Shown: positions 1 through 28,237 of the stretch, in pieces | Layout of the letters: each line of letters opens with the position of its first letter | Numbering within the stretch: position 1 is the stretch's first letter | Origin: Phallusia mammillata | Lineage: Eukaryota | Reading direction: 5' to 3' | DNA length: 64,000 nucleotides | NCBI GenBank assembly: GCA_965637545.1 | Contig: OZ281497.1 | Location: 20,956,001-21,020,000, forward strand | Notes under the pieces: model-generated | What the model saw: only the letters and a program-made list of their open reading frames with translations | Databases searched by the model: none | Told to the model about the DNA's origin: nothing | Translations under genes and position numbers: made by a program

Positions 1-74
1 AAAGTAAGTGACGTTGGCCTGAACAAAATAATAGGTGGAAAACATAAAGACCTTTAACAATGTGCGCTGTTTAG

Positions 75-1215
75 ATCGACTTTGCTAACTCTGCTAACGC
101 TGCAACTTCTACGAAGTTTCTTATCCTCACAACGGATGGTGCTGCAACAGACGCCCACTTATTGCCAACCAGGTTGGTGTTACACTATGACTATACGAGT
201 CGCCTGTATGGTAGGGTTGCCGGATGCCCGGAATTTTCTGGACAAGTCCGGAATTTAGACCTTGTTAAAGCGACCGGATCGCCCCAAAACTTTGTCGATC
301 AGATTTCGCGTGCTTTTTATCTCTGTAACAGTAATGCTATTTTGCCCAAAGTGGGACTGTTTGTAAAAGCATCAAGCCTGTTTGGGTTTGGGGTGGTTAC
401 ATGTAGCAACATGCTGTATAACACATGTTTGGTGTGGACAAAGATGTTTATTGATACCGTCCGAAGGTTTGCTCAGGCAGATATGGTAACCCTCATGCTA
501 TTTATACAGTCGTACTTAAGTTAAATATTTAGAACATATCAATACCACAACTATTGTATTTATTTTGACCAGTTACGGCTTCACCAGTAGCGCCAACATC
601 ACAGTGTACGCTATCGGAATTGGGTCTGAGGTTGTTCAAAGTGAGCTTCAAACCATTGCCAACAACGGCGTCAGCAACGACAGAGTCACAGTGTTGACCG
701 ATTTTTCAACTCTTGGTGAAACCCTAGTAAACATTTCGTCAAGCCTTATACCGGAAGGTAACTAAACTGATATAAAGTACGAAATCAGTTACCTTGTTTC
801 AGTTACAAAGGAAACGCTCCAGCGCGTGGTTTTAACCTTCGTAAACGTTTCTAAAATCAAACCGTTTTACCTCTGGTGTGGTCTACAATTATGACTTTCG
901 GAAAGTTTTTAAAATAGTTAATTGTAACGAAAAGTTAAAAAAAATTACGCATACAATTGCACAGTAGCAATTTTTTTTAATATTAAAGCGTGAAGAAATT
1001 TCACTCTTTCACAAATATGCCAAAAAGGTCTTTATGTTTATTGTGTCTAATGCCCCCCTGCTTTGTTGCTTCGGTACTCTAGGTCAAATTTTTAACTTTG
1101 ATTTTGCAGCACCAACAACGACACAACAAACAACAACAACAACAACGAGTACTACAACACCATCAACAACAATAACAACAATGACCCAAGTCGGTGCGAC
1201 GACTCCAACAGCAAC

Positions 1216-1276
<61 letters not shown>

Positions 1277-4200
1277 ACAGGTTTGTTCAAACTGTAAAAT
1301 GCGATGAAAATTCTAGTTGTTGGACTTCCTTTATTTTATAGCTAATTACGTTTTTTAAATTCTAAAAAAAGTAACAAAAAACTACAGATCAGTCGAATGG
1401 TTTTTATTTTGGGTGGCAGGTGCTGGAACAACGTTGCGACCAAGTTCGTTTCTAATCTTATTGGTCTGTGCTGTTTTGCTTTTTTAACTAGATACTATTG
1501 ACGATCTTTATTTCATTATTGCACCATTTACCAATTTTGTTATAGTTTTATAGTTTATATATTCCGATTTCCACAAAGTTCAGTTTGTAGACTTTTTGCT
1601 TGTGCTTATGTAGTATAACTACACGTATTTACGCTCTCCTGGATCTGTTCAAAAACCAATGCTTACAGCTATGACTGCCGCATATACTGCGCTTTGTTGA
1701 AATAACCCGTTCATCGATCTAAGTGTACAGAAGTGTGACTGAAAAACACTCTATAACGTGCACTGGAAATGCTTTTCGATTTTTGTTGGACTTTGTGGTG
1801 GTATAAATTGGTGAACGTAGTTGCGAAACACACCGCTAGATCTTGGGAAGATAATGGCGAAACAGCAACCCTCGTGTCTAGCACCACATGTATAGGTGCC
1901 GATACCTGCAGGAAAATTGAGCTACGGTATTTGTTACTGCGTTTTTTTAAAACATGTGTATTGAAGTTACCGTACCAATTGGGAAAGATTGGCCCCCGGA
2001 AAATTTTATTTCGTGTTGTTTGACGAATATTTAAAACAGGCAATTTCTAACATCTTATAACCAGATGTTGGGCGTCTGTTGAAAACGTACGACTTTCCTA
2101 TTTTTCATAAAAAGCATTTAATATTCTATACTACATTATCTTATGTTTTACACTTCGAAACCCATGGCATGGTCAACTGTCACATGCGTGCCGTATGTTA
2201 CCTTTTGAACGATCTTTGATCGCAATGAAATTTTGCTTTAGTTGCGACATTACTAAATTTGTATTGCAGCTGTACACTTCCATATACGGAGACCACGTTG
2301 GTCAGACAAAATAATAAATTAAGGGCTTGTTTGCTATTGTTAGTCAAAACGTATTTGTTGACTTAATGATTGTTTTTCTAGTTGTGTGGCAATGTTTTTA
2401 TATCTCATTTATTTTACGCTCCACTGCGTATTAATGATTGCGCAACTTCGTGATTGCGCAGCTATTAAATCAATTTATTTTCATTTTTGTCCACAAAATA
2501 ACACAGCAGTTTTTATTTACCTGCTAAAAGATTAGAGGCCAATCTTTTGTTATCGCGCGGTGATTTTGTTGCATTGTGACGTGCTTGTGTTCCATTCTTT
2601 TTACCTTTGTTTATGCACTGTACTAGTCGCATTCAGTGTTATTTACCCTGATGAAGACGACCTGTATAGGACGTCGAAACGTCGGAATAAAATTACATTT
2701 GCCAGAAGAGCTCTTTAAACTTGATACTATGCCTGGCAGCAATAGCTTATAAACCATCCCTTTTGTCGGGATTTAGGAGTTACATTTAGGTAGGCGAGCA
2801 ATATTTTGACAACATATTGTATTGCAAAATTTCAGCTCAACCTATCGACATTGTGTTTCTGGTGGACAGCACTTCATCAATAACAAATGCTCAGTTTGAA
2901 ACGTACAGGAATGCTTTTCTGACATTAGCTGATAGTCTTGGAACGGGGTTTGCCTCAAACCTTCTGCAAGTAGCTATTCTTCAGTACGGAAACAACAACA
3001 TTTTGGGGTAAATAGATTTTATGCATATAAAAATGATTTCTATGGACAGTGATAAATTCCTTGTATTTGAAATTATATACCTAAAAAAACAAATTTGCAG
3101 CCAAACAATTTCATGCATATCTCATTGACAGCCTTGACTACAACGACAACAGCTTTTACCAGAATCCTACCACTCTTGGAAATTGCACCACAGTCCAATG
3201 CTTCAGGAATGCTGTGACTACTAATATGCCCCATCTTCTGGCAGGAAACACCTTTACTGCAACCGCCATCGAGAGAGCTGTAAAAGTAAGTGACGTTGGC
3301 CTGAACAAAATAATAGGTGGAAAACATAAAGACCTTTAACAATGTGCGCTGTTTAGATCGACTTTGCTAACTCTGCTAACGCTGCAACTTCTACGAAGTT
3401 TCTTATCCTCACAACGGATGGTGCTGCAACAGACGCCCACTTATTGCCAACCAGGTTGGTGTTACACTATGACTATACGAGTCGCCTGTATGGTAGGGTT
3501 GCCGGATGCCCGGAATTTTCTGGACAAGTCCGGAATTTAGACCTTGTTAAAGCGACCGGATCGCCCCAAAACTTTGTCGATCAGATTTCGCGTGCTTTTT
3601 ATCTCTGTAACAGTAATGCTATTTTGCCCAAAGTGGGACTGTTTGTAAAAGCATCAAGCCTGTTTGGGTTTGGGGTGGTTACATGTAGCAACATGCTGTA
3701 TAACACATGTTTGGTGTGGACAAAGATGTTTATTGATACCGTCCGAAGGTTTGCTCAGGCAGATATGGTAACCCTCATGCTATTTATACAGTCGTACTTA
3801 AGTTAAATATTTAGAACATATCAATACCACAACTATTGTATTTATTTTGACCAGTTACGGCTTCACCAGTAGCGCCAACATCACAGTGTACGCTATCGGA
3901 ATTGGGTCTGAGGTTGTTCAAAGTGAGCTTCAAACCATTGCCAACAACGGCGTCAGCAACGACAGAGTCACAGTGTTGACCGATTTTTCAACTCTTGGTG
4001 AAACCCTAGTAAACATTTCGTCAAGCCTTATACCGGAAGGTAACTAAACTGATATAAAGTACGAAATCAGTTACCTTGTTTCAGTTACAAAGGAAACGCT
4101 CCAGCGCGTGGTTTTAACCTTCGTAAACGTTTCTAAAATCAAACCGTTTTACCTCTGGTGTGGTCTACAATTATGACTTTCGGAAAGTTTTTAAAATAGT

Positions 4201-4497
4201 TAATTGTAACGAAAAGTTAAAAAAAATTACGCATACAATTGCACAGTAGCAATTTTTTTTAATATTAAAGCGTGAAGAAATTTCACTCTTTCACAAATAT
4301 GCCAAAAAGGTCTTTATGTTTATTGTGTCTAATGCCCCCCTGCTTTGTTGCTTCGGTACTCTAGGTCAAATTTTTAACTTTGATTTTGCAGCACCAACAA
4401 CGACACAACAAACAACAACAACAACAACGAGTACTACAACACCATCAACAACAATAACAACAATGACCCAAGTCGGTGCGACGACTCCAACAGCAAC

Positions 4498-4540
<43 letters not shown>

Positions 4541-7500
4541 ACAGGTTTGTTCAAACTGTAAAATGCGATGAAAATTCTAGTTGTTGGACTTCCTTTATTT
4601 TATAGCTAATTACGTTTTTTAAATTCTAAAAAAAGTAACAAAAAACTACAGATCAGTCGAATGGTTTTTATTTTGGGTGGCAGGTGCTGGAACAACGTTG
4701 CGACCAAGTTCGTTTCTAATCTTATTGGTCTGTGCTGTTTTGCTTTTTTAACTAGATACTATTGACGATCTTTATTTCATTATTGCACCATTTACCAATT
4801 TTGTTATAGTTTTATAGTTTATATATTCCGATTTCCACAAAGTTCAGTTTGTAGACTTTTTGCTTGTGCTTATGTAGTATAACTACACGTATTTACGCTC
4901 TCCTGGATCTGTTCAAAAACCAATGCTTACAGCTATGACTGCCGCATATACTGCGCTTTGTTGAAATAACCCGTTCATCGATCTAAGTGTACAGAAGTGT
5001 GACTGAAAAACACTCTATAACGTGCACTGGAAATGCTTTTCGATTTTTGTTGGACTTTGTGGTGGTATAAATTGGTGAACGTAGTTGCGAAACACACCGC
5101 TAGATCTTGGGAAGATAATGGCGAAACAGCAACCCTCGTGTCTAGCACCACATGTATAGGTGCCGATACCTGCAGGAAAATTGAGCTACGGTATTTGTTA
5201 CTGCGTTTTTTTAAAACATGTGTATTGAAGTTACCGTACCAATTGGGAAAGATTGGCCCCCGGAAAATTTTATTTCGTGTTGTTTGACGAATATTTAAAA
5301 CAGGCAATTTCTAACATCTTATAACCAGATGTTGGGCGTCTGTTGAAAACGTACGACTTTCCTATTTTTCATAAAAAGCATTTAATATTCTATACTACAT
5401 TATCTTATGTTTTACACTTCGAAACCCATGGCATGGTCAACTGTCACATGCGTGCCGTATGTTACCTTTTGAACGATCTTTGATCGCAATGAAATTTTGC
5501 TTTAGTTGCGACATTACTAAATTTGTATTGCAGCTGTACACTTCCATATACGGAGACCACGTTGGTCAGACAAAATAATAAATTAAGGGCTTGTTTGCTA
5601 TTGTTAGTCAAAACGTATTTGTTGACTTAATGATTGTTTTTCTAGTTGTGTGGCAATGTTTTTATATCTCATTTATTTTACGCTCCACTGCGTATTAATG
5701 ATTGCGCAACTTCGTGATTGCGCAGCTATTAAATCAATTTATTTTCATTTTTGTCCACAAAATAACACAGCAGTTTTTATTTACCTGCTAAAAGATTAGA
5801 GGCCAATCTTTTGTTATCGCGCGGTGATTTTGTTGCATTGTGACGTGCTTGTGTTCCATTCTTTTTACCTTTGTTTATGCACTGTACTAGTCGCATTCAG
5901 TGTTATTTACCCTGATGAAGACGACCTGTATAGGACGTCGAAACGTCGGAATAAAATTACATTTGCCAGAAGAGCTCTTTAAACTTGATACTATGCCTGG
6001 CAGCAATAGCTTATAAACCATCCCTTTTGTCGGGATTTAGGAGTTACATTTAGGTAGGCGAGCAATATTTTGACAACATATTGTATTGCAAAATTTCAGC
6101 TCAACCTATCGACATTGTGTTTCTGGTGGACAGCACTTCATCAATAACAAATGCTCAGTTTGAAACGTACAGGAATGCTTTTCTGACATTAGCTGATAGT
6201 CTTGGAACGGGGTTTGCCTCAAACCTTCTGCAAGTAGCTATTCTTCAGTACGGAAACAACAACATTTTGGGGTAAATAGATTTTATGCATATAAAAATGA
6301 TTTCTATGGACAGTGATAAATTCCTTGTATTTGAAATTATATACCTAAAAAAACAAATTTGCAGCCAAACAATTTCATGCATATCTCATTGACAGCCTTG
6401 ACTACAACGACAACAGCTTTTACCAGAATCCTACCACTCTTGGAAATTGCACCACAGTCCAATGCTTCAGGAATGCTGTGACTACTAATATGCCCCATCT
6501 TCTGGCAGGAAACACCTTTACTGCAACCGCCATCGAGAGAGCTGTAAAAGTAAGTGACGTTGGCCTGAACAAAATAATAGGTGGAAAACATAAAGACCTT
6601 TAACAATGTGCGCTGTTTAGATCGACTTTGCTAACTCTGCTAACGCTGCAACTTCTACGAAGTTTCTTATCCTCACAACGGATGGTGCTGCAACAGACGC
6701 CCACTTATTGCCAACCAGGTTGGTGTTACACTATGACTATACGAGTCGCCTGTATGGTAGGGTTGCCGGATGCCCGGAATTTTCTGGACAAGTCCGGAAT
6801 TTAGACCTTGTTAAAGCGACCGGATCGCCCCAAAACTTTGTCGATCAGATTTCGCGTGCTTTTTATCTCTGTAACAGTAATGCTATTTTGCCCAAAGTGG
6901 GACTGTTTGTAAAAGCATCAAGCCTGTTTGGGTTTGGGGTGGTTACATGTAGCAACATGCTGTATAACACATGTTTGGTGTGGACAAAGATGTTTATTGA
7001 TACCGTCCGAAGGTTTGCTCAGGCAGATATGGTAACCCTCATGCTATTTATACAGTCGTACTTAAGTTAAATATTTAGAACATATCAATACCACAACTAT
7101 TGTATTTATTTTGACCAGTTACGGCTTCACCAGTAGCGCCAACATCACAGTGTACGCTATCGGAATTGGGTCTGAGGTTGTTCAAAGTGAGCTTCAAACC
7201 ATTGCCAACAACGGCGTCAGCAACGACAGAGTCACAGTGTTGACCGATTTTTCAACTCTTGGTGAAACCCTAGTAAACATTTCGTCAAGCCTTATACCGG
7301 AAGGTAACTAAACTGATATAAAGTACGAAATCAGTTACCTTGTTTCAGTTACAAAGGAAACGCTCCAGCGCGTGGTTTTAACCTTCGTAAACGTTTCTAA
7401 AATCAAACCGTTTTACCTCTGGTGTGGTCTACAATTATGACTTTCGGAAAGTTTTTAAAATAGTTAATTGTAACGAAAAGTTAAAAAAAATTACGCATAC

Positions 7501-7761
7501 AATTGCACAGTAGCAATTTTTTTTAATATTAAAGCGTGAAGAAATTTCACTCTTTCACAAATATGCCAAAAAGGTCTTTATGTTTATTGTGTCTAATGCC
7601 CCCCTGCTTTGTTGCTTCGGTACTCTAGGTCAAATTTTTAACTTTGATTTTGCAGCACCAACAACGACACAACAAACAACAACAACAACAACGAGTACTA
7701 CAACACCATCAACAACAATAACAACAATGACCCAAGTCGGTGCGACGACTCCAACAGCAAC

Positions 7762-7804
<43 letters not shown>

Positions 7805-10800
7805 ACAGGTTTGTTCAAACTGTAAAATGCGATGAAAATTCTAGTTGTTGGACTTCCTTTATTTTATAGCTAATTACGTTTTTTAAATTCTAAAAAAAGT
7901 AACAAAAAACTACAGATCAGTCGAATGGTTTTTATTTTGGGTGGCAGGTGCTGGAACAACGTTGCGACCAAGTTCGTTTCTAATCTTATTGGTCTGTGCT
8001 GTTTTGCTTTTTTAACTAGATACTATTGACGATCTTTATTTCATTATTGCACCATTTACCAATTTTGTTATAGTTTTATAGTTTATATATTCCGATTTCC
8101 ACAAAGTTCAGTTTGTAGACTTTTTGCTTGTGCTTATGTAGTATAACTACACGTATTTACGCTCTCCTGGATCTGTTCAAAAACCAATGCTTACAGCTAT
8201 GACTGCCGCATATACTGCGCTTTGTTGAAATAACCCGTTCATCGATCTAAGTGTACAGAAGTGTGACTGAAAAACACTCTATAACGTGCACTGGAAATGC
8301 TTTTCGATTTTTGTTGGACTTTGTGGTGGTATAAATTGGTGAACGTAGTTGCGAAACACACCGCTAGATCTTGGGAAGATAATGGCGAAACAGCAACCCT
8401 CGTGTCTAGCACCACATGTATAGGTGCCGATACCTGCAGGAAAATTGAGCTACGGTATTTGTTACTGCGTTTTTTTAAAACATGTGTATTGAAGTTACCG
8501 TACCAATTGGGAAAGATTGGCCCCCGGAAAATTTTATTTCGTGTTGTTTGACGAATATTTAAAACAGGCAATTTCTAACATCTTATAACCAGATGTTGGG
8601 CGTCTGTTGAAAACGTACGACTTTCCTATTTTTCATAAAAAGCATTTAATATTCTATACTACATTATCTTATGTTTTACACTTCGAAACCCATGGCATGG
8701 TCAACTGTCACATGCGTGCCGTATGTTACCTTTTGAACGATCTTTGATCGCAATGAAATTTTGCTTTAGTTGCGACATTACTAAATTTGTATTGCAGCTG
8801 TACACTTCCATATACGGAGACCACGTTGGTCAGACAAAATAATAAATTAAGGGCTTGTTTGCTATTGTTAGTCAAAACGTATTTGTTGACTTAATGATTG
8901 TTTTTCTAGTTGTGTGGCAATGTTTTTATATCTCATTTATTTTACGCTCCACTGCGTATTAATGATTGCGCAACTTCGTGATTGCGCAGCTATTAAATCA
9001 ATTTATTTTCATTTTTGTCCACAAAATAACACAGCAGTTTTTATTTGCTGTATATACAGGGATTAACAGCAATCTACAATTTTCATCTCCCAGTCAAGCA
9101 CAAAAACATAGATAATTTGCAATTGCAACTTAAATTTTTGTTTGAATACATAAAAATGAAGTTTTAAAAAGCAACACCTCGCTTTTGAAGGGTAAATCTT
9201 TGCTCTGCCTTATGACTTTATGGGACCGTCTTTCGTCAGTAGACTATGGTGGATATTCTGCGAAGGATTAGGCAAACAATGGGACAATAATGGTTCCAAA
9301 ATTTTCGAAGTGAAAAGCGTATTTTCGGCCTTTGTGTTGTCATTATAACCATGCGGCGACTGGATTTAATTCGAGGAATTGAACTAAATGTGCCAGGTTA
9401 ATACTTGAGTTCTTTGTGTTGATGTTGAAATTCCAGGAAAAGTCAAGGCTCATCCTTTTGGAATCACTCAAGCCCGAACATCAGCCTTTGACTATGATTC
9501 CCATTGTTGATTTTGTGAAGCCACGCAAAGATGCGAAACCGTTTAATCGTCGTGATGAAAGTTAATCTTTGGCATTATAAGCTTGAGTTACGTTCAATGC
9601 CTGACAAAACGGTTTTACCAAAAGCAATAGACCCAGTTTATAATGCTATCAATCCTTCTATTGTTTTATTGACACACAGTTAGACACATATTTACAAAGA
9701 CAATGGAAAAGTCTGTGGATTTTACGATTGATTAGTCGAAGTACTGGACGAAATTATGTCAGAACAATGTTTTCTCTAAGCTTTTCTGTTTGTATAACCC
9801 AGAGTTGTAAACGGGCCTGAAATTTGAGGCAAAACCCGACCCGAACCTCCATTTTTTTGTTCATTTATAAGAAGCCCGTTTAAGCCCTAAAGTTCGATTG
9901 ACAAGTCTATACAATTGCAGCGAGGAAAAACCAAGACAACAAACACAATAGACAATTCGTGTTGAAAAGGCGTTTTGGGGATTTTGGCATTAGGTCAGAT
10001 CCAGCAACTGTAACTACTTAGCTGGTTAAATTTATTCAAAAAAATACTGAACCAGAGTGTAAAGTCAGGCCCGAATTTAGGCTGTTTTTTTAGGAAAGCT
10101 GAACCCGAACCCGGCTCCAAAAGCGGCCAACTGATACAAATCATCCGACGTTTTGACGTTTTATGAGGCGTCTTTCCCAGGAAATATGCCTGACAACAAC
10201 ACTCTATTCATTAGGTTTTTCTTGTCTCTTCAAACATAAAATGCAGACGACTGATAGACACAAACAATTTGACGGAAATGTCAATTGGTCGTATTGTGCC
10301 ACAACTTTCCGCTATATGTGGCGTAGCCAATGATGCATATCTCCACGGATGCTTTCATGGTATTCAACGTTTCTATTAATAACCGTATATATTCGCCTTG
10401 GAAAAGTATGTTAAGGTATACAAGGGCAATGCCATAATACTACATTGCAGGACTTTGTAACGAACGAATGTGCCCTTCGTTATTTTTAAATTCGTTTCCC
10501 TGTCAACACACAATTTATAGGAAGTAAACAACCTTGAATAATGGGTTTGAGGCAAATCCTTTGAGTTATTTTTGAAAACATGTTTTATTTTTTATGCAAC
10601 TAAAAATTAGTTACGGCTTAATGGCACAGTTGTGGTAAACAGAGCCCCACCCCAACACTCGTCGCTATCATTTGCATCTCTTTGGAGATTCTGACATTCT
10701 AACCCATTCTATTTTTGTGGCCGTTGTCTTGCTTGACTGCAAACGCGTTCGAGAAATTTACCCTGCAAACCCAATGTCTCGTAGTGTTTGTTTCGCGGTC

Positions 10801-13800
10801 GAATGCAATCGACCTTTCGGTAAAATGCGGCGTTGTGCATTTTCGCACCAATCGTATAAGGTTATGATGTGTTTCCGTTATATATTTTTTAGTTTAAGAG
10901 ACTAAGTGTTTTCAAGCATAGTTGTTTTAGTTGATAGATTGCTTTTAAATACTTTGTTTAGAACACTTGTTCTTTAACATTCTTGTAGGTCTGCTCGTAT
11001 TTTTGACGCAATTACATTTTCAATTTGTTTTACCACATTGAAAGCGAAAAAATAGTCGTGTGGTTGTTAAAACAATCGATTTTACTAAATCTTTTAAATT
11101 CGAAATCCTAGTGTTGAGAAACATTATTCAGAGACAAAAATGGACAGAACCATAGGACTAGACCCAAAATGTAAACACCTAAATTTTTGTCGATGCAAGT
11201 ATTGCAAAAAACTCAACTTTTAACGACCAAATTTAACGAAGTACAAGCCACAAGCATTGACCTGAACGCTATGTATTGTTGGGCCAAACAAAAGGAAGTG
11301 CCATTTGAGGGAGCTTATACGTCGCATATATGATGAGTAACATTAAAATTTTGAGATTCAACTCTTTAGTTTAGTTCCACCCTTTTTATTTTGATTCACT
11401 ATTTTACAAGCCACCTGCAAGTTTGGTATTCTTGAATGGTTGATTGCACAGACGAGCCGGCCCACAATAGTCTGAAATCTGAGCAGTAACTCAATTATCA
11501 TGAAAGAAAATATGTAGACGAGTGCGTCACGCGATCACTGACGTCAGTGGTGGGTTGAGTACCGCTCGATCTCGACTGCACTGCCTAAAAGAGATTGACC
11601 TTACTTGCTGCCTAAAAGAGATTGATGACAAATGGAACCCGTAAAACAGTATGCTTTTGCGAATCGTTTTTAAAACTTATTATTTGGCAAGCGAAACATG
11701 CTGATGTTTTTGAAAAACTAAATGGCTTCACAATCCTTAAACCTCGCTAAATGGCTTCACAATCCTTAAACGTGTATGAATATAGTTTACAATGTAGTTA
11801 AGTACAGTTTTTATTCTTGTTTTCCTTGAGTTAGCAATTATCACATCTATAGGCAAATAATGCAAGTGTGTACAAATAGAAAAAAAAACTTGTCACCGTT
11901 TTAAACATACATACCAAATGATCATTAAACCTATATAATTTGCTTACAAAAATATTTGTAACTCATCGCCCTTTTCATGGATTTTGCAACTGCCTGAAAC
12001 TTGGCCTGATTAGGTCAAGTTTAACCACATTATTACATGTCAAAATTCTGTCAAATTTTCTGAAGGCGTTTAACTTGTACGCACCAAATCGTGTCCGCGA
12101 GAGATTTTATTGTTAGACTACATCACTACGATTTCCCGTCCGTTGTAAAATCGTCGTTTGTATACACAACACGTTCGTATCGATTTCAGCTTTGTGAGCA
12201 TTAAAAACATTTTAAAACAACACTCATTTTATCGAAGGTGGTTGGAGAGAAAGCAATATAAGGTAGTGGAAAGGCAGCGAAAAACGGACCGCAAATGTTA
12301 TACTTGACTTTTTCATTAGAGAAATTGAACAGATCAACTTATCAACCTATATATATGTGAAAATGTTTATGTCACATTAAACAGTATGAGTTTAGTAGGT
12401 GCCTGCCAAGCAATGAGGTATACTGTAAAACACTCGTAAATTTTACTGGTCATGATACGTTTAAATTTTATGAAAGACATGTAAAAAATAATAACAAGGG
12501 AATGCACATATATACTTGCGCATAAAATAAAAAGGTGACAAAAAAGTTTTTCACAGTAAATATTTTAACTGTGATATTATTCTCGCAAAATGCTATTTCA
12601 TCACAAGTGCGTCATCGTGTAAACTTTAACGTATGGAACCACGGGAATTTCCTGGTACGTTTAGGGTTCACTGAGTCAAGGTAAAAAACATTTGACAAAC
12701 TGACTCACGTTGCGCACCAATTCCTTTGTCTACGTACTTGGGGCTGTGACATTTACACCCAATCTATTTTCGCCCCGTTTTCTCGCTTGACTAAGGGTGC
12801 GTTTTCTTTCAACATCTGTGTGTTTTTAAGCTCATAGGGCAGCGATTGTGACCACGGGAGGTCATGTTCTAACTACTGCCTCTTACCGATGTTTAGGCTT
12901 ATTGTGTTTATTTCAGTTACAGGTTGTCTTGATTTAAATGAACTAATAAACAAATATGTCAAGGATTTTGTTGTGGATTGTTTCGACTTTGGTAGTTTTT
13001 CATGCCTCTTATGCCTCAGGTAAGGCGCTGTTAAAAGTAGGTGGCATAAACAGACTGTGCATCTCTGTGTTTGGTTGCGGCACAGTTTTTGCAAATTAAA
13101 CATAAGCATTCGCTTCTGATAAAACTTTTTAACGGTTTGTTTCCAACTTGTTTGGATAACACAGCCGCTCGTAATCGGTTATCAATTCCACATGAAAGCA
13201 TAGCCATTAAATTGATCTTGTGCATCACCAAGCGTAAGCGCGTACCAAAATTAATAAAAAATAACTGCACCAACTTCCTTATAGGTCCTTATAGGTTAAC
13301 TTTTTTAGTGGTAATTGCAAGTTATAAACCAACAACACATTTATTTTGATGTAGTTTACTGCTTTATCTTCATTTTGAAATTAACTCAAGCAGATATAAG
13401 TTATATATAGAAAATGTTTCGTATCCCACCATTTTCTTATCTCGCGTAAAGACTGTTGCTTTCCACGCGGCGGGTTTTCAAGTTTAGGTGTTACCTGCGT
13501 AACATCTTAAACGCTGCCACGAAATTTAAGTGTAACGTACTGTAGCGAAGGTGCAAATAATGACTTAAGCTACGTCTTCATCGACAGGTAATATAGTAAT
13601 ACATCTGAGAAATAATAATATGGCATTATTTTTATTCATTTTTTAACGTATAACAGCCGATCTACAGCCTCGTTTCCATTTTTAATCATAAACTTGATCA
13701 AAACCTTTGATACGTTTCCATAAAAACGCTATTCCAGCAATTTGGTAACATTTACACAAAATATGTAAAAGAATTAGTGCGGAGACAAGTAAAGTATGTG

Positions 13801-16488
13801 CAGAAACAATTAAGCTCATTGTTTTAGTTACGTTGTGTTATTTTATTGCTTTGTTTCTTGCTTTGTTAAGGGCCGGTGTACAGAAAGTATCTCCATAAAC
13901 TTGTTTCGTTTTTGTTTTCAGAAAATGTCACCACACCGATCGCAACAGCACCAGGTAATGTTATCTTTGCGAAAATACACAAATGTCGAAAGCTTAAAAC
14001 ATTTTTTTTCTTCTTATTTTGCAAATGAGTTGCCGACAGTAACTTCTGCTTTTTTACATATTATCAAGTTGCACCTATAACGATGACATACATCACAGCT
14101 GTGTATTTTAAATATTTGTTTTAAAGCATTTGGGCAATTATCATAACATAGAGTTAAAGTTTTTTTTTTCCAAATCAATGCGCAAATTACCACCCTTCTT
14201 CGTTTTATAGCAGAGATTTCTTCCACTTACCCACCAACAAGACCAGGTAAGTCCATTTTGAAAATATTTTCTGAAATGTTAAAGAAGCATCATGCCGTAC
14301 TAAACGTTAAACAAAGTTGTGGCACTAATAACGCTTGGCGCTTCTACCGCAACTAAGTCTAACAATTTTTTTAGGACTTTTTCTAAATTGCTATATTTTC
14401 TTCGATCTGTTCCAGGTCCTACTACCGTTCTACCTATTACTACCGTTCCACCAACTGCAGTACCAGCAGGTAACAAACATTTCTAAAGTATTTTTCAATA
14501 AATTAAAAGCAGGACCATGTAAACAAAGTTGTGTTCCATTCAGTTGCCGCTTCTTTTTTATCCAGGTTTAAAACATTAAAAACACATATTTATTACAGAA
14601 ATAAATGACAAGCAATAACATATTCATTACAGAAATGTTTTTTTTTTACTTTCGTACATGGCACGAGCAAAAAGACATCTATATATATATATTTATATAT
14701 AAGATATATTCTATTGTAATCGTCAGGTGTCGAAACGTTGTGATGTTTTAGACACAAATACTGGCTTGTACCTTTTTGCTTAGACCAGTGGACATTTTCA
14801 ATGGGCCACAGAGCCATTTGAACAGATTCTACTGTTTTGTTATACTATAAATATTATGCGCTTTGTTTTGAAAAACATAATATTTGCAATACAATAATTA
14901 TTTAGCAAGAAAGGTCATTGCTTCCTGTGATATTTGCTGTGTTCTGTCATCAACAGAGCCGAGAATTCTGAATCTTGTAGGCAAATTTCAGGAGCATGTA
15001 TTTCATTAAAAATAAATTGATAACACCATTTCGCCTGCTGATGCGTTAAATTTTCATAGAAATTGTTTTTGCCCAAATTTACAGCACGTGTTGAGCCACG
15101 AATCGCTATTAAATAGACATTCGGGCCACGGACCAAAAAAGTTTGGGAACCCCTGGCTTAGAGTATGGAACTGTGCATTGTTTACGTAAGTGTATAGCAT
15201 GATTTTTTTGCTGTGTTATAGACAATTCCAGCAGACCGACCAACACTTCACCAACTTTTCCACCACCCCCCGGTATACATGTTGCATAAAATCTTTCGTT
15301 GTCGAAACGTTGCGATGTTTTACACACAAATATTGGCTTGTACCTTTTAGCTCATATACGGAACCGTGCATTATATACCTAATTATAGAGCATGCTGTTT
15401 TGTGTTATAGGCAATACCAGCAGACCGACCAACTCATCATCAACGTTTCCACCACCGCCTGGTACATGTTGCATAAAATGCTGTTTTAAAGTAGTAAATA
15501 TTTGCTTCCCGGTGTAAAAAATCTCAAGCCTACTAATCTGTTTTCCATAACTTCGGGAATAGTTACACACGCGTTCCTACATAACATACTGTTGCATTAT
15601 GCGTAGAAAACGATTTTGTACTGTAAATGAAAAGGTGAAATAGGTTTTTAATCGTGAGGTGTTTTTATTGTAGGAAACTTTACTGTTCGTCCGACCAACA
15701 CTACCTCTACTTCCACATTTAGTCCAGGTACAAAATTTTTCCTGACCACTTTAATATTTATTGTTAAACAATCTGTAGATGTATACGCATTTCTGCATTA
15801 ACTTATTACGGATGAGATATGACTTGGTAAACGTTCTTGGTTTATGCACAGTCTGCAAAACTATTTGTACCAAATAAGGTACAAGTCGGAAAAAATTAAC
15901 CTGCAAAAAATAAATTTGAATTTTAGGAAACTTTACTTTTCGCCCAACAAACTTCACATTTACGACTCCACCACCGTCAACTGGTGCACCAGGTACGTTT
16001 CAATTTACTCAAACACTGCAATTACCACTTAAATCACTGCGACGTGTAAACTCCAGTGCGTTTTTAATCACACAATACATATCACTTCTAATTTACCTGC
16101 AATGCTTTAAACTTATTCTGTTGTAGGAGATTTTTGCACACGACAACAGTCCGCTTACCTGCGTCAGTTGAGACAGTACAGGACCATGCTTGTCGACTGG
16201 GACGGCTCTATTCAGAATTGCCTTGCCTGCGACAAACGCACTTGCTTGGCTGAGTACGAGCGTCAGCCCTTTACCGCCTACCTGTACAGGCTTGAGGCCT
16301 GGTTCATCTACTTCGACCAGTGGAAGCGTGAATATGAAAGTTTTGTGTACAGCCAGCAGGGTGGGTGGTCAAACGACTGCGCTCTTCGCGTAAGGCGCCA
16401 GTATTTAGAGTTCGTGTGTCTATGGAAAAGCAAGCTTGATCTGTGGAAATATGCATACAAGCAGTGGGTGGACTGTGGTAAATACTAA
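75..16488 (+). CDS. Multi-VWA-domain, mucin-like extracellular protein (5' end upstream of window), with Pro/Thr stalk and aromatic-rich C-terminal domain
   Basis: Hand-spliced, phase-compatible GT-AG exons: 75-172, 573-757, 1110-1280; 2836-3007, 3132-3285, 3357-3454, 3855-4039, 4392-4544; 6100-6271, 6396-6549, 6621-6718, 7119-7303, 7656-7808; micro-exons 13922-13954, 14211-14246, 14416-14469, 15222-15272, 15411-15461, 15674-15727, 15927-15992; last exon 16127-16488 (TAA). VWA hallmarks: IDIVFLVDSTSS, VAILQYG, GNTFTATAIERA, FLILTTDG, VYAIGIG. Confidence 0.85.
1110..1280 (+). repeat. Coding (ACA)n / (GCAACA)n repeat in the Thr-rich linker exon (also 4392-4544 and 7656-7808)
   Basis: Encodes PTTTQQTTTTTTSTTTPS...(TA)n, with 8 Thr-Ala repeats in the first copy and 5 in the other two (18-bp difference). 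Confidence 0.95.
2639..2690 (+). ncRNA. Minimal type-I hammerhead ribozyme-like motif (Penelope-like-element type), copy 1
   Basis: CTGATGA core 2648-2654; extra A; stem II GACG-A-CCT / AGG-A-CGTC with GTAT loop; GAAA 2676-2679; palindromic ACGT stem III; GTC triplet 2681-2683; stem I TTATT(TA)CC / GGAATAA; overlapping AATAAA downstream. Confidence 0.65.
5903..5954 (+). ncRNA. Minimal type-I hammerhead ribozyme-like motif, copy 2
   Basis: Identical to 2639-2690, offset 3264 (core CTGATGA starts at 5912). Confidence 0.65.
9800..10130 (+). mobile_element. Degenerate non-autonomous DNA transposon (same family as 38152-38513 and 60887-61083)
   Basis: Starts CAGAGTTGTAAACGGGCC, has internal CAGAGTGTAAAGTCAGGC and repeated CCCGAA/CCCGAC motifs shared with the other two copies. 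Right end and TSD not resolved. Confidence 0.55.
14786..15155. mobile_element. hAT-type MITE in an intron of the VWA gene
   Basis: Right end GTTTGGGAACCCCTG, degenerate left end CAGTGG, flanks GCTTAGAC / GCTTAGAG (7 of 8 match). The paralogous intron 15273-15410 lacks the insert. Confidence 0.75.
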
Positions 16489-19114
16489 AAAAGCTGAAAT
16501 TAACAACAAACCTGACATTTTTATTGTACGTTTTCGGCGTAGTTCCATCAGTTGATTTTAAATTGTACATTTTTCTTCAAAGTATGTCATACAGTTTGCA
16601 ATTAAATTGTACATTTTTCTTCAAAGTATCTTGTACAGTTTGCAATAACTAACCAAAGTGTTCTTGGATTATTTTTTTTGCATTTTTTTACGCACATTGA
16701 CGACATTTTGTTGAGTGAAGTGAGCGTTCTAATATGCAGACAACCAAGAAACTGTATATGTTTGTTTAAAATGAATTTCATTTTTGAACGGTTTTTTACG
16801 CAGTTGCCGAAATTAACTAACATATAACTTTTGGTCGAAGAAACCATTTTTTTTAAAGCTAGCTGGCCGGGACATGGTGCAGTTTTGCTTCAAAACGGCA
16901 ATCGCTCAACTGTAACGCATCACGTGCAGATGAAATGGGCATGTCAAAAGCTATTTTTTTGCACTGAAACATAAGACGTGACAATAGATGGTGTAGCCAG
17001 GAGATGCAGCTGCACGAATATCAAGCGTCTTAACTGATCTTGAATAAACTGTTCTGCTGGTCGACTTAGTTTCTTAGACTGCCCTATTCTTGATTCCTTC
17101 TAGTGTATTATATATGTCTCTTGAGATCATGATGCATTTATTTATTGCCATGATGCTTAAGGCCTGCTGGATAGGGACGACTTGATACACAAAACACCAC
17201 TTTTCCTGCCTGTTTATTCTGGTTATTCTGCACGCATAGAATCTCAGTAAACCCAGGGGAAGAATACACCCATAAAAAACAATAAAACACAAGCGTTTTA
17301 GACAGAAACTCATATTTCTTGCGAGTAAACTCTCGACGTCAATTGCACATATTCACGACATCGGAGTTCATAATGCTTATAATAGTATTTTATGCATTGA
17401 TCAACAATACGTCAACATGAACTCCCAGGAAAATCAGTTTACATCTTGTGATATTTTGTGCTTTAACTTTATCGTAGATATGTCAAACGACACCTAAAAG
17501 TCATAAGAATCAATGCCACACCACGAAAAAAGATTACATGATCATGTTGTCAAACCTCTAATGTTAGTAAGCTCAATCACATGTTGTTCAAACTTTGCAA
17601 CTTCGGGAAAAAGAACATATTCACGTATAAATCTCACACAAAAACACTGGGAAGTGCCATTTTTCACGACGGTGTATTCGTTCTGGAAATGAATATTGAT
17701 TTGAACCATCGATATGACCGCTAGGAACATTTTCACACAGTTTCCCATTGACGTTATGCTTGACAAGAAAGTCAGCAAGACATTTTGGCCTGTGTTACAC
17801 ATGTCAAAAACTGTTATGTTTTTTGTTCACACACATTTGCTAACATATTTCCTGCCAATAAGTGGACTGATAATGAAAAGCTAGATTTACCATATACTTT
17901 TGATGAGATAGATTTAAGGGTAGTTCTCAACCGTTTAAAAATTACGCACCCCTTGACAAAAATTACAAGGCAAATTAACCCCACACCAAAAAAATGGTTA
18001 ATACAAGTTAGGTTATATCAGTACATAAATAAGGGAATCTTAGCTCTTAAAAGTATAAAATATTTTCGACAGAACTCTGTTAAAGTGTATTACGTCAGTA
18101 AAGCGGCACAAAACGCGGCAGCCGAAGAGCATATACCGTGGGAATCGGAAACCAGGTTATCCAACCGCTCGGTCATAACAAGGTCGTGGCTTTGCAAACT
18201 GTCAGAGCGAATTGTGTTTTGTAGGTTTTAACTTGGTCGATCATTCTAAGCAAGTTTTAATTAAACTGCCGACTTTGAAATTGTTGCTATCAGTGCATGT
18301 AAACTGCTTAGGTTTTCTTAACTTACGCCGAAAACGAATTCGTTTTTAAAACCAACAAGCAGGTTAACAGTTTCAAAATAAAATAATTTTGTGTGGTAAG
18401 TTTTGTGACAATATCAGAACAAAAGTTCAATGTGTCTAATGCTATGTTTGCTAATATGTGCATAATGGCTCTCACAACAATGTCGAAACCTTTGTGCCTT
18501 TGATGCACTTTGACCGTTAACACCAATTGCGTTTGCATTCACTGCTTTCGTGTGAAATCATTTACATTACATCCGGACCATATGTGCTTCCTGTTTTTAA
18601 AACTATCACACATTCGCACGGCTGTGCTGCAGTTTTGCAGAACTGTACCGCAAGTTGTACACGCTACGTGGAATTAGGCTGTTAAGTTGATAAAAGTTAA
18701 GAATTTTTTTGTAGATAGGGCTTAAGGCAGGCAATGTTATTTATTACTCCCTTCTGAGAAAGGGCAGGGCCCATTTGGTGCGTTACTATGAGGACGGTAG
18801 ACTATTGTTGATGGCGCCAAACTGGCAAAAACCGCCTGAGGCTAGACATTTCGATACCAGCGGGAGAGTAATTGTGAAACAGGCCTCAGTGGGAGTCGCA
18901 AAGCAGACCAGAACACCAGACTACCGTATGTCTGTAAACGCTAGCAACAACTGGTTTATATCAAATCAAGCATTCTATTGCTGTTGACTTCACTAGGCCT
19001 TCGAATGGTTAATAATTTGAGTCATTATATTTTTTTGCAGATTTCTTACAGTTGTACCAAGGTGTTGCTCATGAGAGCATTTGATAGTAGAAACGGGCAA
19101 TATATTTAATCATC

Positions 19115-26493: not shown

Positions 26494-27900
26494 TTAATGG
26501 AGAAGGCTTTGCCGTTCGTTATTAGCATTTCCATTTTCCTTTGGTTCTTCCATCTCGAAACGCCTGTACTCTGGAGACAAAAAGCAACTAAAAAACGCAC
26601 TAAGAAACAAATTGACAGCCTGGAAAATCACCACAGCCAGACCACCGAGGCTTTGGAATATAACACGTCCAATCTCACCATAGAAAACTCCCATTGGGGT
26701 CATAATGCCGATTAACCAAATCGTAACGAACGTTTCATCGACTGGGTACGTATGTTGAGTAACGATTTCGTAAATAGACACCATAGCAACTTGGGTGAAA
26801 AAACCAATGACCACGTTTGAAACGTAAATGGATACAACATTTGTAAACAAAACTCCTAAAACAACACCAACGGAGCCCAGAAAAGTCAGCAGAGTTCCGC
26901 ATATTGCAATTACCTTGTAGTTCTTGTACTTGTCGACCAACTTCGCAGCGGGAATCGTACCACAAATACTTCCAGCAGAGTAAAAGCATATAACGTAGCC
27001 ACCCATTGCATCATACCTTAATTGAGAGTCTGTTTTCTGCGCCCAAGCTTTGAAAATTTGCGACATCATTGTGAATTCGACTGTGGTTGCTTCAAATATA
27101 ATACCAAAGATGATACACGCCATGATAAAGGTTTTGTTGGTTAGAATGGATCCGGTTTGAAACCAGAACCTTGACGAATCTACGTTTGTTTGTTCAATAC
27201 TTTTTCGTGCTTGGGCGACTGTCGGTGGCTTGGGTGGAACGTCGGTAACCCAAATGCAAAGCAAAACGAGAATTAAAAAACAAATCCCAAAAGAGCAAGA
27301 GTAGATTTCAAGTAGAATATTGCGATTTCCAGTCAGCACTGTAGAGTTGTTGGTTGTGTTACTGGTATTAGATAAGGACAATAGGTTAGTCGGAAGCACG
27401 ACACCTAGACCGTACCCAGCAAAAACACCCATAAGATTAAGGCTTATTGCAGTTCCAATTTCGTTCTCTGCGAACCAAACCGCTCCGAATATCGACGGAG
27501 TTGCCATGAGAACTTGCGCTGCTAGACCATTCAAAGCCTGTCCAATGATGCTTAGGCCAAACAGATTAGGATGAATTAGGGAAAGCGCAAAAGAAGCATA
27601 CGCCCCAATCAACGCAAAGGCACAGAAAATTGTCAAGATTCTGATTTTTACGTATCTGCGATAAGTAAGCCAAGCAAATGGGACAGTCAGAACCAATGGC
27701 GGCACATCGAAAACCAACGTCATCCAATCGACTTGCACATAGGTCACGTGAAAATAGGAAACAAAAAAATTGCTGATTTGACCAAAGCATGAAAACGAAA
27801 ATCCGGATAAAACTTGAAGAAGTGTTAGCGCCAGCAGAAACACCCAACGTCGCTTGTACAGATGAACATCTTCCTTTCCATCTGGTACTTCTTCGGACAT
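26494..27900 (-). CDS. MFS transporter, SLC49 (FLVCR/DIRC2)-like, 468 aa, intronless ORF (copy 1)
   Basis: About 12 hydrophobic segments; YKRRW before TM1, PSIFGAVWFAENEIGTA and PPKPPTVAQA resemble recalled FLVCR-family motifs (YKRRW, PSxxAxVWFxxxExxTA, PxxPPSxAQ). Confidence 0.85.
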   Translation of the reverse strand: MSEEVPDGKEDVHLYKRRWVFLLALTLLQVLSGFSFSCFGQISNFFVSYFHVTYVQVDWMTLVFDVPPLVLTVPFAWLTYRRYVKIRILTIFCAFALIGAYASFALSLIHPNLFGLSIIGQALNGLAAQVLMATPSIFGAVWFAENEIGTAISLNLMGVFAGYGLGVVLPTNLLSLSNTSNTTNNSTVLTGNRNILLEIYSCSFGICFLILVLLCIWVTDVPPKPPTVAQARKSIEQTNVDSSRFWFQTGSILTNKTFIMACIIFGIIFEATTVEFTMMSQIFKAWAQKTDSQLRYDAMGGYVICFYSAGSICGTIPAAKLVDKYKNYKVIAICGTLLTFLGSVGVVLGVLFTNVVSIYVSNVVIGFFTQVAMVSIYEIVTQHTYPVDETFVTIWLIGIMTPMGVFYGEIGRVIFQSLGGLAVVIFQAVNLFLSAFFSCFLSPEYRRFEMEEPKENGNANNERQSLLH

Positions 27901-28237
27901 AATTTAAGTACAGTAGTTAAGGTCAAAGTTACAAAACTACACAACTCAAGGCTGCAAAATATAACGCCTGTTTGCAGAAATCGAGTAAGACAACAACAGA
28001 CACGTATAGACAATCATGAAGACATATGCTTCGCTTTTGTAGTTATTTGTACCGACGTCTGTTACCTTCCTGTTTAACGTTAAAATAATCAGATTCATTC
28101 GCCACATTGTTATGAACCAGCAGGAGCAAAAACAGTGAGAACAAAGAGCATAGAGCAAAGCTCACAACAAAAACACTTGCTGTAAAGTGCAGGACGATAA
28201 AGCAAAACAAAACGGACACAATACATGTTAGCATCGG

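What the first reader, a model, noticed from the sequence alone, without database searches (positions are those of the whole stretch)
16127..16488. Unrecognised C-terminal domain with three helical Trp/Tyr heptad stripes; candidate new cellulose-binding or zipper module
Seen: 120 aa with 12 Tyr, 7 Trp and 7 Cys, in three segments with aromatics exactly 7 apart: YLRQLRQYRTMLVDW, YLYRLEAWFIYFDQW and YLEFVCLWKSKLDLWKYAYKQW, separated by Cys-containing turns. Established: 7 helical residues rise about 10.5 angstrom, close to the cellobiose repeat, and type A carbohydrate-binding modules stack coplanar aromatics on crystalline cellulose; tunicates make a cellulose tunic. Inference: this domain may anchor a multi-VWA glycoprotein to tunic cellulose. 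Alternatives are an aromatic-zipper oligomerisation bundle or Tyr/DOPA cross-linking sites.
Basis: partly seen in the sequence, partly recalled or inferred. Interest (0 to 1): 0.72.

Follow-up and report, generated by a model that had tools for sequence, protein, structure and literature searches.

The report
Aromatic-core three-helix tail domain
The last exon of a sea-squirt (Phallusia mammillata) secreted-protein gene encodes a real 119-residue domain with no detectable relatives, built from three copies of a 41-residue helix whose tryptophans and tyrosines most likely form the buried core of a small helical bundle and not an exposed cellulose-binding surface.

Summary
Window 16127-16488 (+) is a phase-1 terminal exon of 119 codons plus a stop, with 12 Tyr, 7 Trp and 7 Cys, and three Tyr/Trp ladders spaced exactly 7 apart. 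I add three points. (1) The ladders start exactly 41 residues apart, so the domain is a gapless triplication of a 41-residue unit (P about 0.001). (2) The ladders are the d positions of ordinary a/d heptads: 11 of 12 d positions are aromatic, all 9 internal a positions are hydrophobic, and polar residues lie on the opposite face. (3) AlphaFold from the single sequence gives an up-down-up three-helix bundle of spectrin-repeat size (pLDDT 71), with only generic fold matches.

Pfam, NCBIfam, PDB sequences, a word search, an exhaustive scan of 1.84 billion proteins and a metagenome scan found no true relative.

A sharp GC step (0.50 against 0.33-0.35) and seven upstream phase-1 mini-exons encoding a glycosylated Pro/Thr stalk support a real coding exon. 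No RNA evidence was obtained, and the join to the VWA-mucin cassettes is inferred.

Best reading: a disulfide-stapled bundle with an aromatic core that serves as a C-terminal assembly knob. Its odd cysteine count suggests covalent pairing. The cellulose-binding idea is not supported, though it is not excluded.

The parts
16127..16488 (+). Terminal coding exon: phase-1 acceptor, 119 full codons from 16129, TAA stop at 16486-16488.
   Evidence: GC is 0.50 against 0.35 upstream and 0.33 downstream, with sharp edges at both exon ends, and GC3 is 0.64.
16129..16251 (+). Repeat 1 (residues 1-41): helix with d positions Y10, Y17, W24, C31 and a positions L14, L21, I28, followed by C31-x2-C34-x4-C39.
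16252..16374 (+). Repeat 2 (residues 42-82): the most hydrophobic helix, with d positions Y51, W58, W65, F72 and a positions L55, F62, Y69.
16375..16485 (+). Repeat 3 (residues 83-119): d positions Y92, W99, W106, W113 and a positions V96, L103, Y110; cysteines C84, C97, C116.
15927..15992 (+). Phase 1-1 mini-exon (NFTFRPTNFTFTTPPPSTGAP). Its last base, with 16127-16128, forms the Gly codon at the junction.
15674..15727 (+). Phase 1-1 mini-exon (NFTVRPTNTTSTSTFSP), homologous to the exons at 15927, 15411 and 15222.
15411..15461 (+). Phase 1-1 mini-exon (NTSRPTNSSSTFPPPP).
15222..15272 (+). Phase 1-1 mini-exon (NSSRPTNTSPTFPPPP).
14416..14469 (+). Phase 1-1 mini-exon (PTTVLPITTVPPTAVPA).
14211..14246 (+). 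Phase 1-1 mini-exon (EISSTYPPTRP).
13922..13954 (+). Phase 1-1 mini-exon (NVTTPIATAP).
16601..16606 (+). ATTAAA, a candidate polyadenylation signal 113 nt after the stop, inside a 44-bp unit repeated twice (16558-16646).
1..9046 (+). Context: tandem 3264-bp cassettes encoding VWA domains plus Thr-rich mucin linkers. This is the presumed upstream part of the same gene; the link is inferred.
   Evidence: Pfam VWA matches at E 3.6e-7 and 5.5e-4.

Best explanation
This is a genuine terminal coding exon. It encodes an extracellular domain, restricted to this lineage as far as the searches could see, that arose by triplication of a 41-residue helix-plus-turn unit. Each unit contributes one helix of four heptads. 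The Tyr/Trp ladder is the d position and Leu/Ile/Val/Phe/Tyr the a position. The three helices therefore pack up-down-up into a bundle of spectrin-repeat size, whose core is made of stacked aromatic layers (Y-F-Y, Y-W-W, W-W-W, C-Y-W). Helices 1 and 3 run parallel and carry cysteines at equivalent repeat positions (C3/C84 and C34/C116), so disulfide staples at both ends of the bundle are plausible. With seven cysteines, at least one is left unpaired; C97, at a surface b position, is the likeliest. The domain sits at the end of a glycosylated Pro/Thr stalk, probably on a (VWA-mucin)n matrix protein. I propose that it acts as a compact C-terminal assembly knob that pairs or cross-links chains. 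That is the role played by the coiled coil of matrilins and the C-terminal knot of VWF and mucins. What is shown: the exon anatomy, the residue counts, the 41-residue repeat, the a/d pattern and the absence of relatives. What is predicted: the bundle fold. What is inferred: the disulfide pairing, the oligomerisation role and the link to the VWA gene.
For: Coding exon: the GC step coincides with the ORF (0.50 against 0.33-0.35; GC3 0.64). The acceptor is phase 1 and matches seven upstream phase 1-1 mini-exons with canonical splice sites. ATTAAA lies downstream.

Triplication: the self-similarity scores at offsets 41 and 82 are the two highest of all offsets from 5 to 89, with z about 5, and P(any offset reaches that score) = 0.0014. 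Y10, L11 and W24 are invariant in a gapless alignment of the three units.

Core reading: the d positions read YYWC/YWWF/YWWW and the a positions LLI/LFY/VLY. The chance that all nine a positions are hydrophobic is 1.5e-5. The mean direction of polar residues is 148-180 degrees from the stripe in every helix, and aliphatic residues lie 35-76 degrees from it. No helix has a second non-polar face that could form a core while leaving the stripe exposed.

Fold: AlphaFold2 without an alignment gives pLDDT 71.3 and pTM 0.61, with helices at 5-32, 36-43, 47-74 and 82-115; three of the five models agree. VIA-align gives Z 10-11 and rmsd about 3 A over 106-115 residues to spectrin, plakin and alpha-actinin repeats. 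Foldseek's best matches are spectrin repeats and syntaxin Habc.

Context: VWA domains lie upstream. Matrilins combine A-domains with a C-terminal oligomerising coiled coil (PMC2726956).
Against: No transcript evidence was obtained. The only runs holding the exon are genomic DNA, and the putative RNA runs have no contigs over it.

The fold comes from a single sequence at moderate confidence. The tool warns that Z below about 13 for helical bundles may reflect only a common arrangement. I could not read coordinates, so burial and Cys-Cys distances were reasoned from heptad geometry and not measured.

Three tryptophans in one layer of a three-helix bundle is tight packing. From my own knowledge, bulky aromatic cores can favour larger assemblies, as in Trp- and Phe-zipper pentamers.

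No exon was recognised between about 7810 and 13922, so the stalk plus this domain might be a separate gene.

The assembly role rests only on analogy and on the odd cysteine count.
Confidence: 0.55

Rival explanations
1. Inter-chain coiled coil or domain-swapped bundle. The three helices do not close on themselves. They interdigitate with helices of other chains, giving a larger aromatic-zipper oligomer locked by the C31-x2-C34 pair, as in matrilin, COMP and thrombospondin.
For: The heptads are canonical. A CxxC pair sits directly at the end of helix 1; from memory, COMP ends its coiled coil with a similar Cys-x-x-Cys ring. Bulky aromatic cores favour wider bundles (own knowledge). The triplication suggests an ancestor that was a self-associating single helix (inference). 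Two of the five AF2 models did not converge, with pLDDT 47 and 33.
Against: The three helices have equal length, four heptads each. The short connecting turns (about 14 and 8 residues) suit an intramolecular up-down-up bundle, and AF2 closes it as a monomer. There is no profile match to the matrilin or COMP coiled-coil families.
Confidence: 0.2
2. One reading: a helical polysaccharide-binding module. The heptad-spaced Trp/Tyr (about 10.5 A apart) lie exposed and stack on the pyranose rings of crystalline tunic cellulose, or of chitin, and so anchor the glycoprotein.
For: The spacing arithmetic is right, and the animal makes a cellulose tunic (species). The domain is 21% aromatic and basic, with pI 8.7. 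Tunicate cellulose-associated matrix proteins are lineage-specific and poorly known (PMC3390340). No search contradicts the idea by assigning another function.
Against: The stripes sit in the only non-polar seam, next to the aliphatic a positions and opposite the polar face, so they are what a bundle buries. Exact heptads drift 20 degrees per step on a straight helix, 60 degrees over the four-rung ladder, and so imply supercoiled helix packing and not a flat platform (established coiled-coil geometry). From my own knowledge, known type A cellulose-binding modules are beta folds; the model here is all-alpha and there is no CBM profile match. Unchecked earlier notes of this scan report conventional CBM2-like modules elsewhere in this genome.
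Confidence: 0.07
3. Cross-linking substrate. The many tyrosines are sites for DOPA, dityrosine or tunichrome-type oxidative cross-links that harden the matrix, and the helical pattern is secondary.
For: There are 12 Tyr in 119 residues. Y53, Y74 and Y108 point 140-170 degrees away from the core stripe and are predicted to be exposed. Another note on this genome describes a Trp-Tyr-Asp repeat matrix candidate (unchecked).
Against: Most of the Tyr occupy a or d core positions. The strict 41-residue and 7-residue order argues for a folded domain and not a flexible substrate. No modifying enzyme or modification is shown.
Confidence: 0.05
4. The exon is not part of a working VWA gene. It is either unexpressed or decaying, or it belongs with the mini-exons to a separate small stalk-plus-knob gene.
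For: There is no RNA support. A gap of about 6 kb has no recognisable exon between the last mucin exon (about 7810) and the first mini-exon at 13922. The exon's GC3 (0.64) differs from that of a VWA exon (0.43). This species' database proteins do not include the exon.
Against: The ORF is intact and coextensive with the GC block. The a/d pattern is preserved across three old, diverged repeats, which implies long-term selection on the protein. The splice phase is compatible throughout. Two DNA runs show no variants inside the exon, while variants cluster in the flanks (weak evidence).
Confidence: 0.1

Closest known systems
Spectrin repeat (spectrin / plakin / alpha-actinin three-helix bundle)
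   Same: Similar size (106-119 residues), three heptad-patterned helices packed up-down-up, and tryptophans in the core. It gives the best structural matches: Z 10-11, rmsd about 3 A over 106-115 residues.
   Different: There is no sequence or profile similarity. Spectrin repeats are cytoskeletal, cysteine-poor and occur in long arrays. This domain is a single copy at the C-terminus of a glycosylated stalk, holds 7 Cys, has aromatic residues at nearly all d positions, and is itself an internal triplication.
C-terminal coiled-coil oligomerisation modules of VWA-containing matrix proteins (matrilins; also COMP and thrombospondin)
   Same: A heptad-repeat helical module with adjacent cysteines at the C-terminal end of a protein carrying VWA (A) domains. 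In matrilins it drives oligomerisation (PMC2726956).
   Different: Matrilin and COMP use one helix per chain with an aliphatic core. Here three helices lie in one chain with an aromatic core. There is no profile match, and the oligomeric state is unknown.
Type A carbohydrate-binding modules (for example CBM1, CBM2a, CBM3a)
   Same: Several aromatic side chains about 10.4 A apart would match the cellobiose repeat. The organism has crystalline cellulose.
   Different: From my own knowledge, those modules are beta folds with a flat, solvent-exposed aromatic strip. This domain is predicted to be all-alpha, with the aromatics in the non-polar seam. There is no CBM profile match.
Natural and designed aromatic zippers (Phe-zipper dimerisation domain of SH2B/APS; Trp- and Phe-zipper coiled coils). 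Recalled from memory, not tested here.
   Same: Aromatic residues at successive heptad core positions stack along the axis of a helical bundle.
   Different: Those are intracellular or synthetic and have no disulfides. No Pfam match, including to the Phe_ZIP family, was returned.

Membership tests
Spectrin repeat (Pfam PF00435) | Significant match to the family profile | tested here: not met
   hmmscan against Pfam-A at E up to 10 returned no family. phmmer against PDB sequences found nothing.
Spectrin repeat (Pfam PF00435) | Up-down-up left-handed three-helix bundle of about 106 residues | tested here: inconclusive
   The AF2 single-sequence model (pLDDT 71) aligns at Z 10-11 and rmsd about 3 A. 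The tool notes that Z below about 13 is common for helical bundles.
Type A cellulose-binding CBMs | Match to a CBM family profile | tested here: not met
   No Pfam or NCBIfam hit.
Type A cellulose-binding CBMs | Flat, solvent-exposed strip of coplanar aromatic residues | tested here: not met
   This is a test at the level of prediction only. The model is all-helical. The aromatic ladders are heptad d positions inside the sole non-polar seam, opposite the polar face. Coordinates and solvent exposure could not be read.
Type A cellulose-binding CBMs | Binding to crystalline cellulose | not testable with these tools
   This needs a pull-down or depletion isotherm with recombinant protein.
Matrilin / COMP-type coiled-coil oligomerisation domain | Match to the Matrilin_ccoil or COMP profile | tested here: not met
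   No Pfam hit at E up to 10.
Matrilin / COMP-type coiled-coil oligomerisation domain | Canonical a/d heptad repeats with flanking cysteines | tested here: met
   There are 12 d and 9 a positions as listed, and C31-x2-C34 lies at the end of helix 1.
Matrilin / COMP-type coiled-coil oligomerisation domain | Forms disulfide-linked homo-oligomers | not testable with these tools
   No multimer prediction or biochemistry is available here.
VWA domain (upstream cassettes, context only) | Match to Pfam PF00092 | tested here: met
   Exon pieces 2790-3008 (E 3.6e-7, above the gathering score) and 3802-4044 (E 5.5e-4) match profile positions 1-48 and 129-170.

The most novel reading that the evidence does not exclude
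The heptad-spaced Trp/Tyr ladders are, at least in part, surface-exposed in a non-canonical assembly and dock onto crystalline tunic cellulose. That would make this the first all-helical cellulose-binding module of animal origin, tying a VWA-mucin matrix protein to the tunic.
Probability: 0.06. Interest if true: 0.8.

Novelty: new variant of a known kind. Interest (0 to 1): 0.3.

Why it matters
If the reading is right, ascidians have built their own C-terminal assembly module for a VWA-mucin matrix protein. It would be a disulfide-stapled three-helix bundle with an almost purely aromatic core, made by triplicating a single helix, in the position where vertebrate matrilins use a coiled coil and mucins and VWF use a cystine knot. 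That is a neat case of convergent matrix-protein design and of a domain born from a repeat. The bundle's aromatic layers could also interest protein designers. It is not a breakthrough. The domain is known from one genome, has no expression data, and the more exciting cellulose-anchor idea is disfavoured by the sequence pattern itself.

Tried and rejected
- **Family scans.** Pfam-A and NCBIfam on the exon peptide gave nothing. One NCBIfam row at E 0.16 is noise.
- **PDB sequence searches.** The single sequence found nothing. A profile of the three repeats gave only 17-20 residue matches to MBT-domain proteins at E 0.01 or above, which I judged to be chance.
- **Word-index protein search.** No hit.
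- **Exhaustive phmmer against 1.84 billion representatives.** Three hits with E between 1e-8 and 9e-4. All are bacterial or junk repeat proteins, in which 5-8 weak repeated stretches such as 'VDWDGSVIS' add up. I rejected them as false positives.
- **Metagenome scan.** One locus, L001, shares the 11-residue string 'TCLAEYERQPF', but in a reading frame that overlaps a real bacterial gene read in another frame. I rejected it as a chance product of pattern seeding.
- **Reads.** X1 and X2 are genomic DNA, with contiguous coverage across introns and no splice joints. The guessed RNA runs X3 and X8 have nothing on the exon. So there is no expression evidence either way.
- **Missing exons.** I looked at the GC-rich patches between 7810 and 13922 and found nothing convincing.
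- **Foldseek against the PDB.** No match with E below 1.
Full report
**1. What is in the sequence**

The finding's coordinates are a clean exon. A pyrimidine-rich acceptor (…ctgttgtag) ends at 16126 and the exon begins at 16127. Its first two bases complete a split codon, and the frame from 16129 runs for 119 codons to a TAA at 16486-16488.

The peptide has 12 Tyr, 7 Trp, 7 Cys and 6 Phe.
- Y10-Y17-W24
- Y51-W58-W65
- Y92-W99-W106-W113

In 20,000 shuffles of the same residues, three chains of at least three W/Y at spacing 7 appeared in 0.085% of cases.

**2. Is it a real coding exon?**

- GC content is 0.50 inside 16127-16488, against 0.35 in the 500 bases upstream and 0.33 downstream. The step falls within one 120-base bin of both exon ends. 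Third-position GC is 0.64.
- Upstream lie seven mini-exons: 13922-13954, 14211-14246, 14416-14469, 15222-15272, 15411-15461, 15674-15727 and 15927-15992. All are flanked by polypyrimidine-AG and GTA, all have lengths divisible by three, and all are in phase 1. They encode Pro/Thr/Ser-rich peptides with N-x-S/T sequons, such as NSSRPTNTSPTFPPPP and NFTFRPTNFTFTTPPPSTGAP. The last four are visibly homologous to each other.
- The terminal exon's phase-1 acceptor fits this chain, giving …GAP-G-DFCTRQQ….
- An ATTAAA lies 113 nt after the stop.
- The C-terminus has no hydrophobic tail, so there is no GPI or membrane anchor.
- The domain contains no N-glycosylation sequon.

Further upstream, 1-9046 holds tandem 3264-bp cassettes whose exons match Pfam VWA (E 3.6e-7 and 5.5e-4) plus a Thr-rich mucin exon. 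An earlier first-reader note on this window also describes them as phase-1 cassettes.

I found no convincing exon between about 7810 and 13922. Strand, order and phase therefore support the statement 'C-terminus of the multi-VWA glycoprotein', but no transcript shows it.

The only public runs that hold the exon are genomic DNA: they give contiguous coverage across introns and no joints. The putative RNA runs have no contig on it. Expression is therefore open. No variant was reported inside the exon in the two DNA runs, while variants cluster in the flanks. That is a weak hint of constraint.

**3. New anatomy: a triplicated 41-residue unit**

The three ladders begin at residues 10, 51 and 92, exactly 41 apart. 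I scored the sequence against itself at every offset from 5 to 89 with BLOSUM62. Offsets 82 and 41 are the two best (+26 and +25), against shuffle means of -37 and -77, which is z about 5. Only 0.14% of shuffles reach that score at any offset.

A gapless alignment of the three units keeps Y10, L11 and W24 invariant. The motif is Y-L-x2-[LV]-x2-[YW]-x3-[LF]-x2-W-x3-[IY]-x2-[CFW]-[LV].

Identity between units is only 12-22%, so the triplication is old. What has been preserved is the hydrophobic pattern. That preservation is itself evidence of selection on a folded protein.

**4. What the stripes are**

Taking the ladders as heptad position d:
- The twelve d positions read YYWC / YWWF / YWWW.
- The nine internal a positions (d+4) read LLI / LFY / VLY.
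- The chance that all nine a positions are hydrophobic is 1.5e-5.
- Positions b, c and f are mostly charged or polar.

On a helical wheel, the mean direction of the polar residues lies 148-180 degrees from the stripe in each helix, and the aliphatic residues lie 35-76 degrees from it. Each helix thus has a single non-polar seam, and the aromatic ladder runs through it. No second hydrophobic face exists that could make a core while leaving the ladder exposed.

Established coiled-coil geometry points the same way. On a straight alpha-helix, residues i and i+7 are offset by -20 degrees, so a four-rung ladder winds by 60 degrees. Exact heptads are the signature of supercoiled helix-helix packing. 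Helices that lie on flat surfaces use 11- or 18-residue periodicity.

**5. Predicted fold**

AlphaFold2 without an alignment gives pLDDT 71.3 and pTM 0.61. The helices are at 5-32, 36-43 (short), 47-74 and 82-115. Three of the five models agree; the other two failed to converge.

- Foldseek against the PDB finds nothing better than E about 1. The top rows are utrophin and dystrophin spectrin repeats and the syntaxin Habc domain.
- The Foldseek-independent scan gives Z 10-11.3 and rmsd 2.8-3.6 A over 106-115 residues to plakin, spectrin and alpha-actinin repeats. The tool warns that such values are common for helical bundles.

I read this as a generic up-down-up three-helix bundle of spectrin-repeat size, and not as homology. 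Each helix has four d positions, so the bundle would have four aromatic layers.

I could not access coordinates. Burial and disulfide geometry are therefore reasoned and not measured.

**6. Cysteines (inference)**

Helices 1 and 3 are parallel in this topology and carry cysteines at equivalent repeat positions: C3 and C84 at one end, C34 and C116 at the other. This suggests two staples. C31 and C39 lie in the first turn. C97 is at a surface b position. Seven cysteines cannot all pair within one domain, so a free or inter-chain cysteine is expected.

**7. Relatives**

- Pfam-A, NCBIfam and PDB sequences: nothing.
- Word-index search: nothing.
- Exhaustive phmmer over 1.84 billion representatives: three hits. 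All are repeat proteins in which 5-8 weak stretches add up, for example a bacterial protein with many 'VTFVDWDGSVISSQQVDYG' units. I reject them.
- Metagenome scan: one chance 11-residue identity, in a frame overlapping a real bacterial gene.

As a control for database coverage, an intronless MFS gene in this window (26497-27903, minus strand) matches a UniRef/nr entry of Phallusia mammillata at 100%. This identifies the genome and shows that only part of this species' proteome is in the library, because our exon did not even find itself.

'No relatives' therefore means none among annotated proteins, including those of other ascidians that the library holds. It does not prove that the domain is absent from other ascidian genomes.

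The length-windowed search for long relatives was therefore not run.

**8. Interpretation**

My estimates for the preferred reading are:
- real coding exon: about 0.9
- aromatic-core helical bundle: about 0.65
- assembly or cross-linking role: about 0.35

The preferred reading is a disulfide-stapled, aromatic-core three-helix bundle at the tip of a glycosylated stalk. It would act as a C-terminal assembly knob, by analogy with matrilins (A-domains plus an oligomerising coiled coil; PMC2726956) and with the C-terminal dimerising knots of VWF and mucins (own knowledge).

The main rival is that the helices pack between chains rather than within one chain. Bulky aromatic cores and the CxxC after helix 1 make this plausible.

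The animal makes cellulose, and tunicate cellulose-associated proteins are lineage-specific (PMC3390340). But the a/d pattern, the polar back face and the all-helical prediction all disfavour it. Unchecked notes of this scan also report conventional CBM2-like modules elsewhere in this genome.

Tyrosine cross-linking could involve the few predicted exposed tyrosines (Y53, Y74, Y108), but it does not explain the architecture.

**9. Verdict**

The domain is an orphan and, by fold, a new variant of a familiar kind. Interest is modest (0.3) until expression, conservation or binding data exist.

Noticed in passing
window 14790-15160: High-copy interspersed repeat inside the intron between mini-exons. 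Contig depth rises from about 76-100 to more than 20,000 in X1, and from about 200-400 to more than 100,000 in X2. Contigs break at its edges.
   Followed up: no
window 15222-15992: Four homologous phase-1 mini-exons (N-x-S/T-x-RPTN…PPP), each with its own acceptor and GTA donor, spaced 190-255 bp apart. This is a small tandem mini-exon array that lengthens an N- and O-glycosylated stalk. Tandem Repeats Finder did not detect it because the copies have diverged too far.
   Followed up: partly
window 16558-16646: A 44-bp unit repeated twice (93% match) in the presumed 3' UTR. It carries the ATTAAA at 16601.
   Followed up: no
window 26497-27903 (-) and 31374-32810 (-): Two intronless MFS transporter genes of 469 and 479 codons. 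The first is 100% identical to a UniRef entry named FLVCR2-like from Phallusia mammillata, which identifies the genome.
   Followed up: partly
window 16127-16488 compared with 2847-3008: The terminal exon is markedly GC-richer than a VWA exon presumed to belong to the same gene (GC 0.50 and GC3 0.64, against GC 0.42 and GC3 0.43). This is unexplained. It may reflect a different origin or age of the exon, or a separate gene.
   Followed up: no
P0001-P0003 and L001:524-604: Search artefacts to be aware of. phmmer E-values down to 1e-8 arose purely from summing 5-8 weak matches to repeat proteins. The pattern-seeded metagenome scan returned an 11-residue exact match in a non-coding frame of a bacterial contig.
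   Followed up: yes
window 7810-13922: About 6 kb with no recognisable exon on the + strand, between the last mucin exon of the VWA cassettes and the first mini-exon. This is much longer than the other introns of the gene, and several GC-rich patches in it have no open frame.
   Followed up: partly
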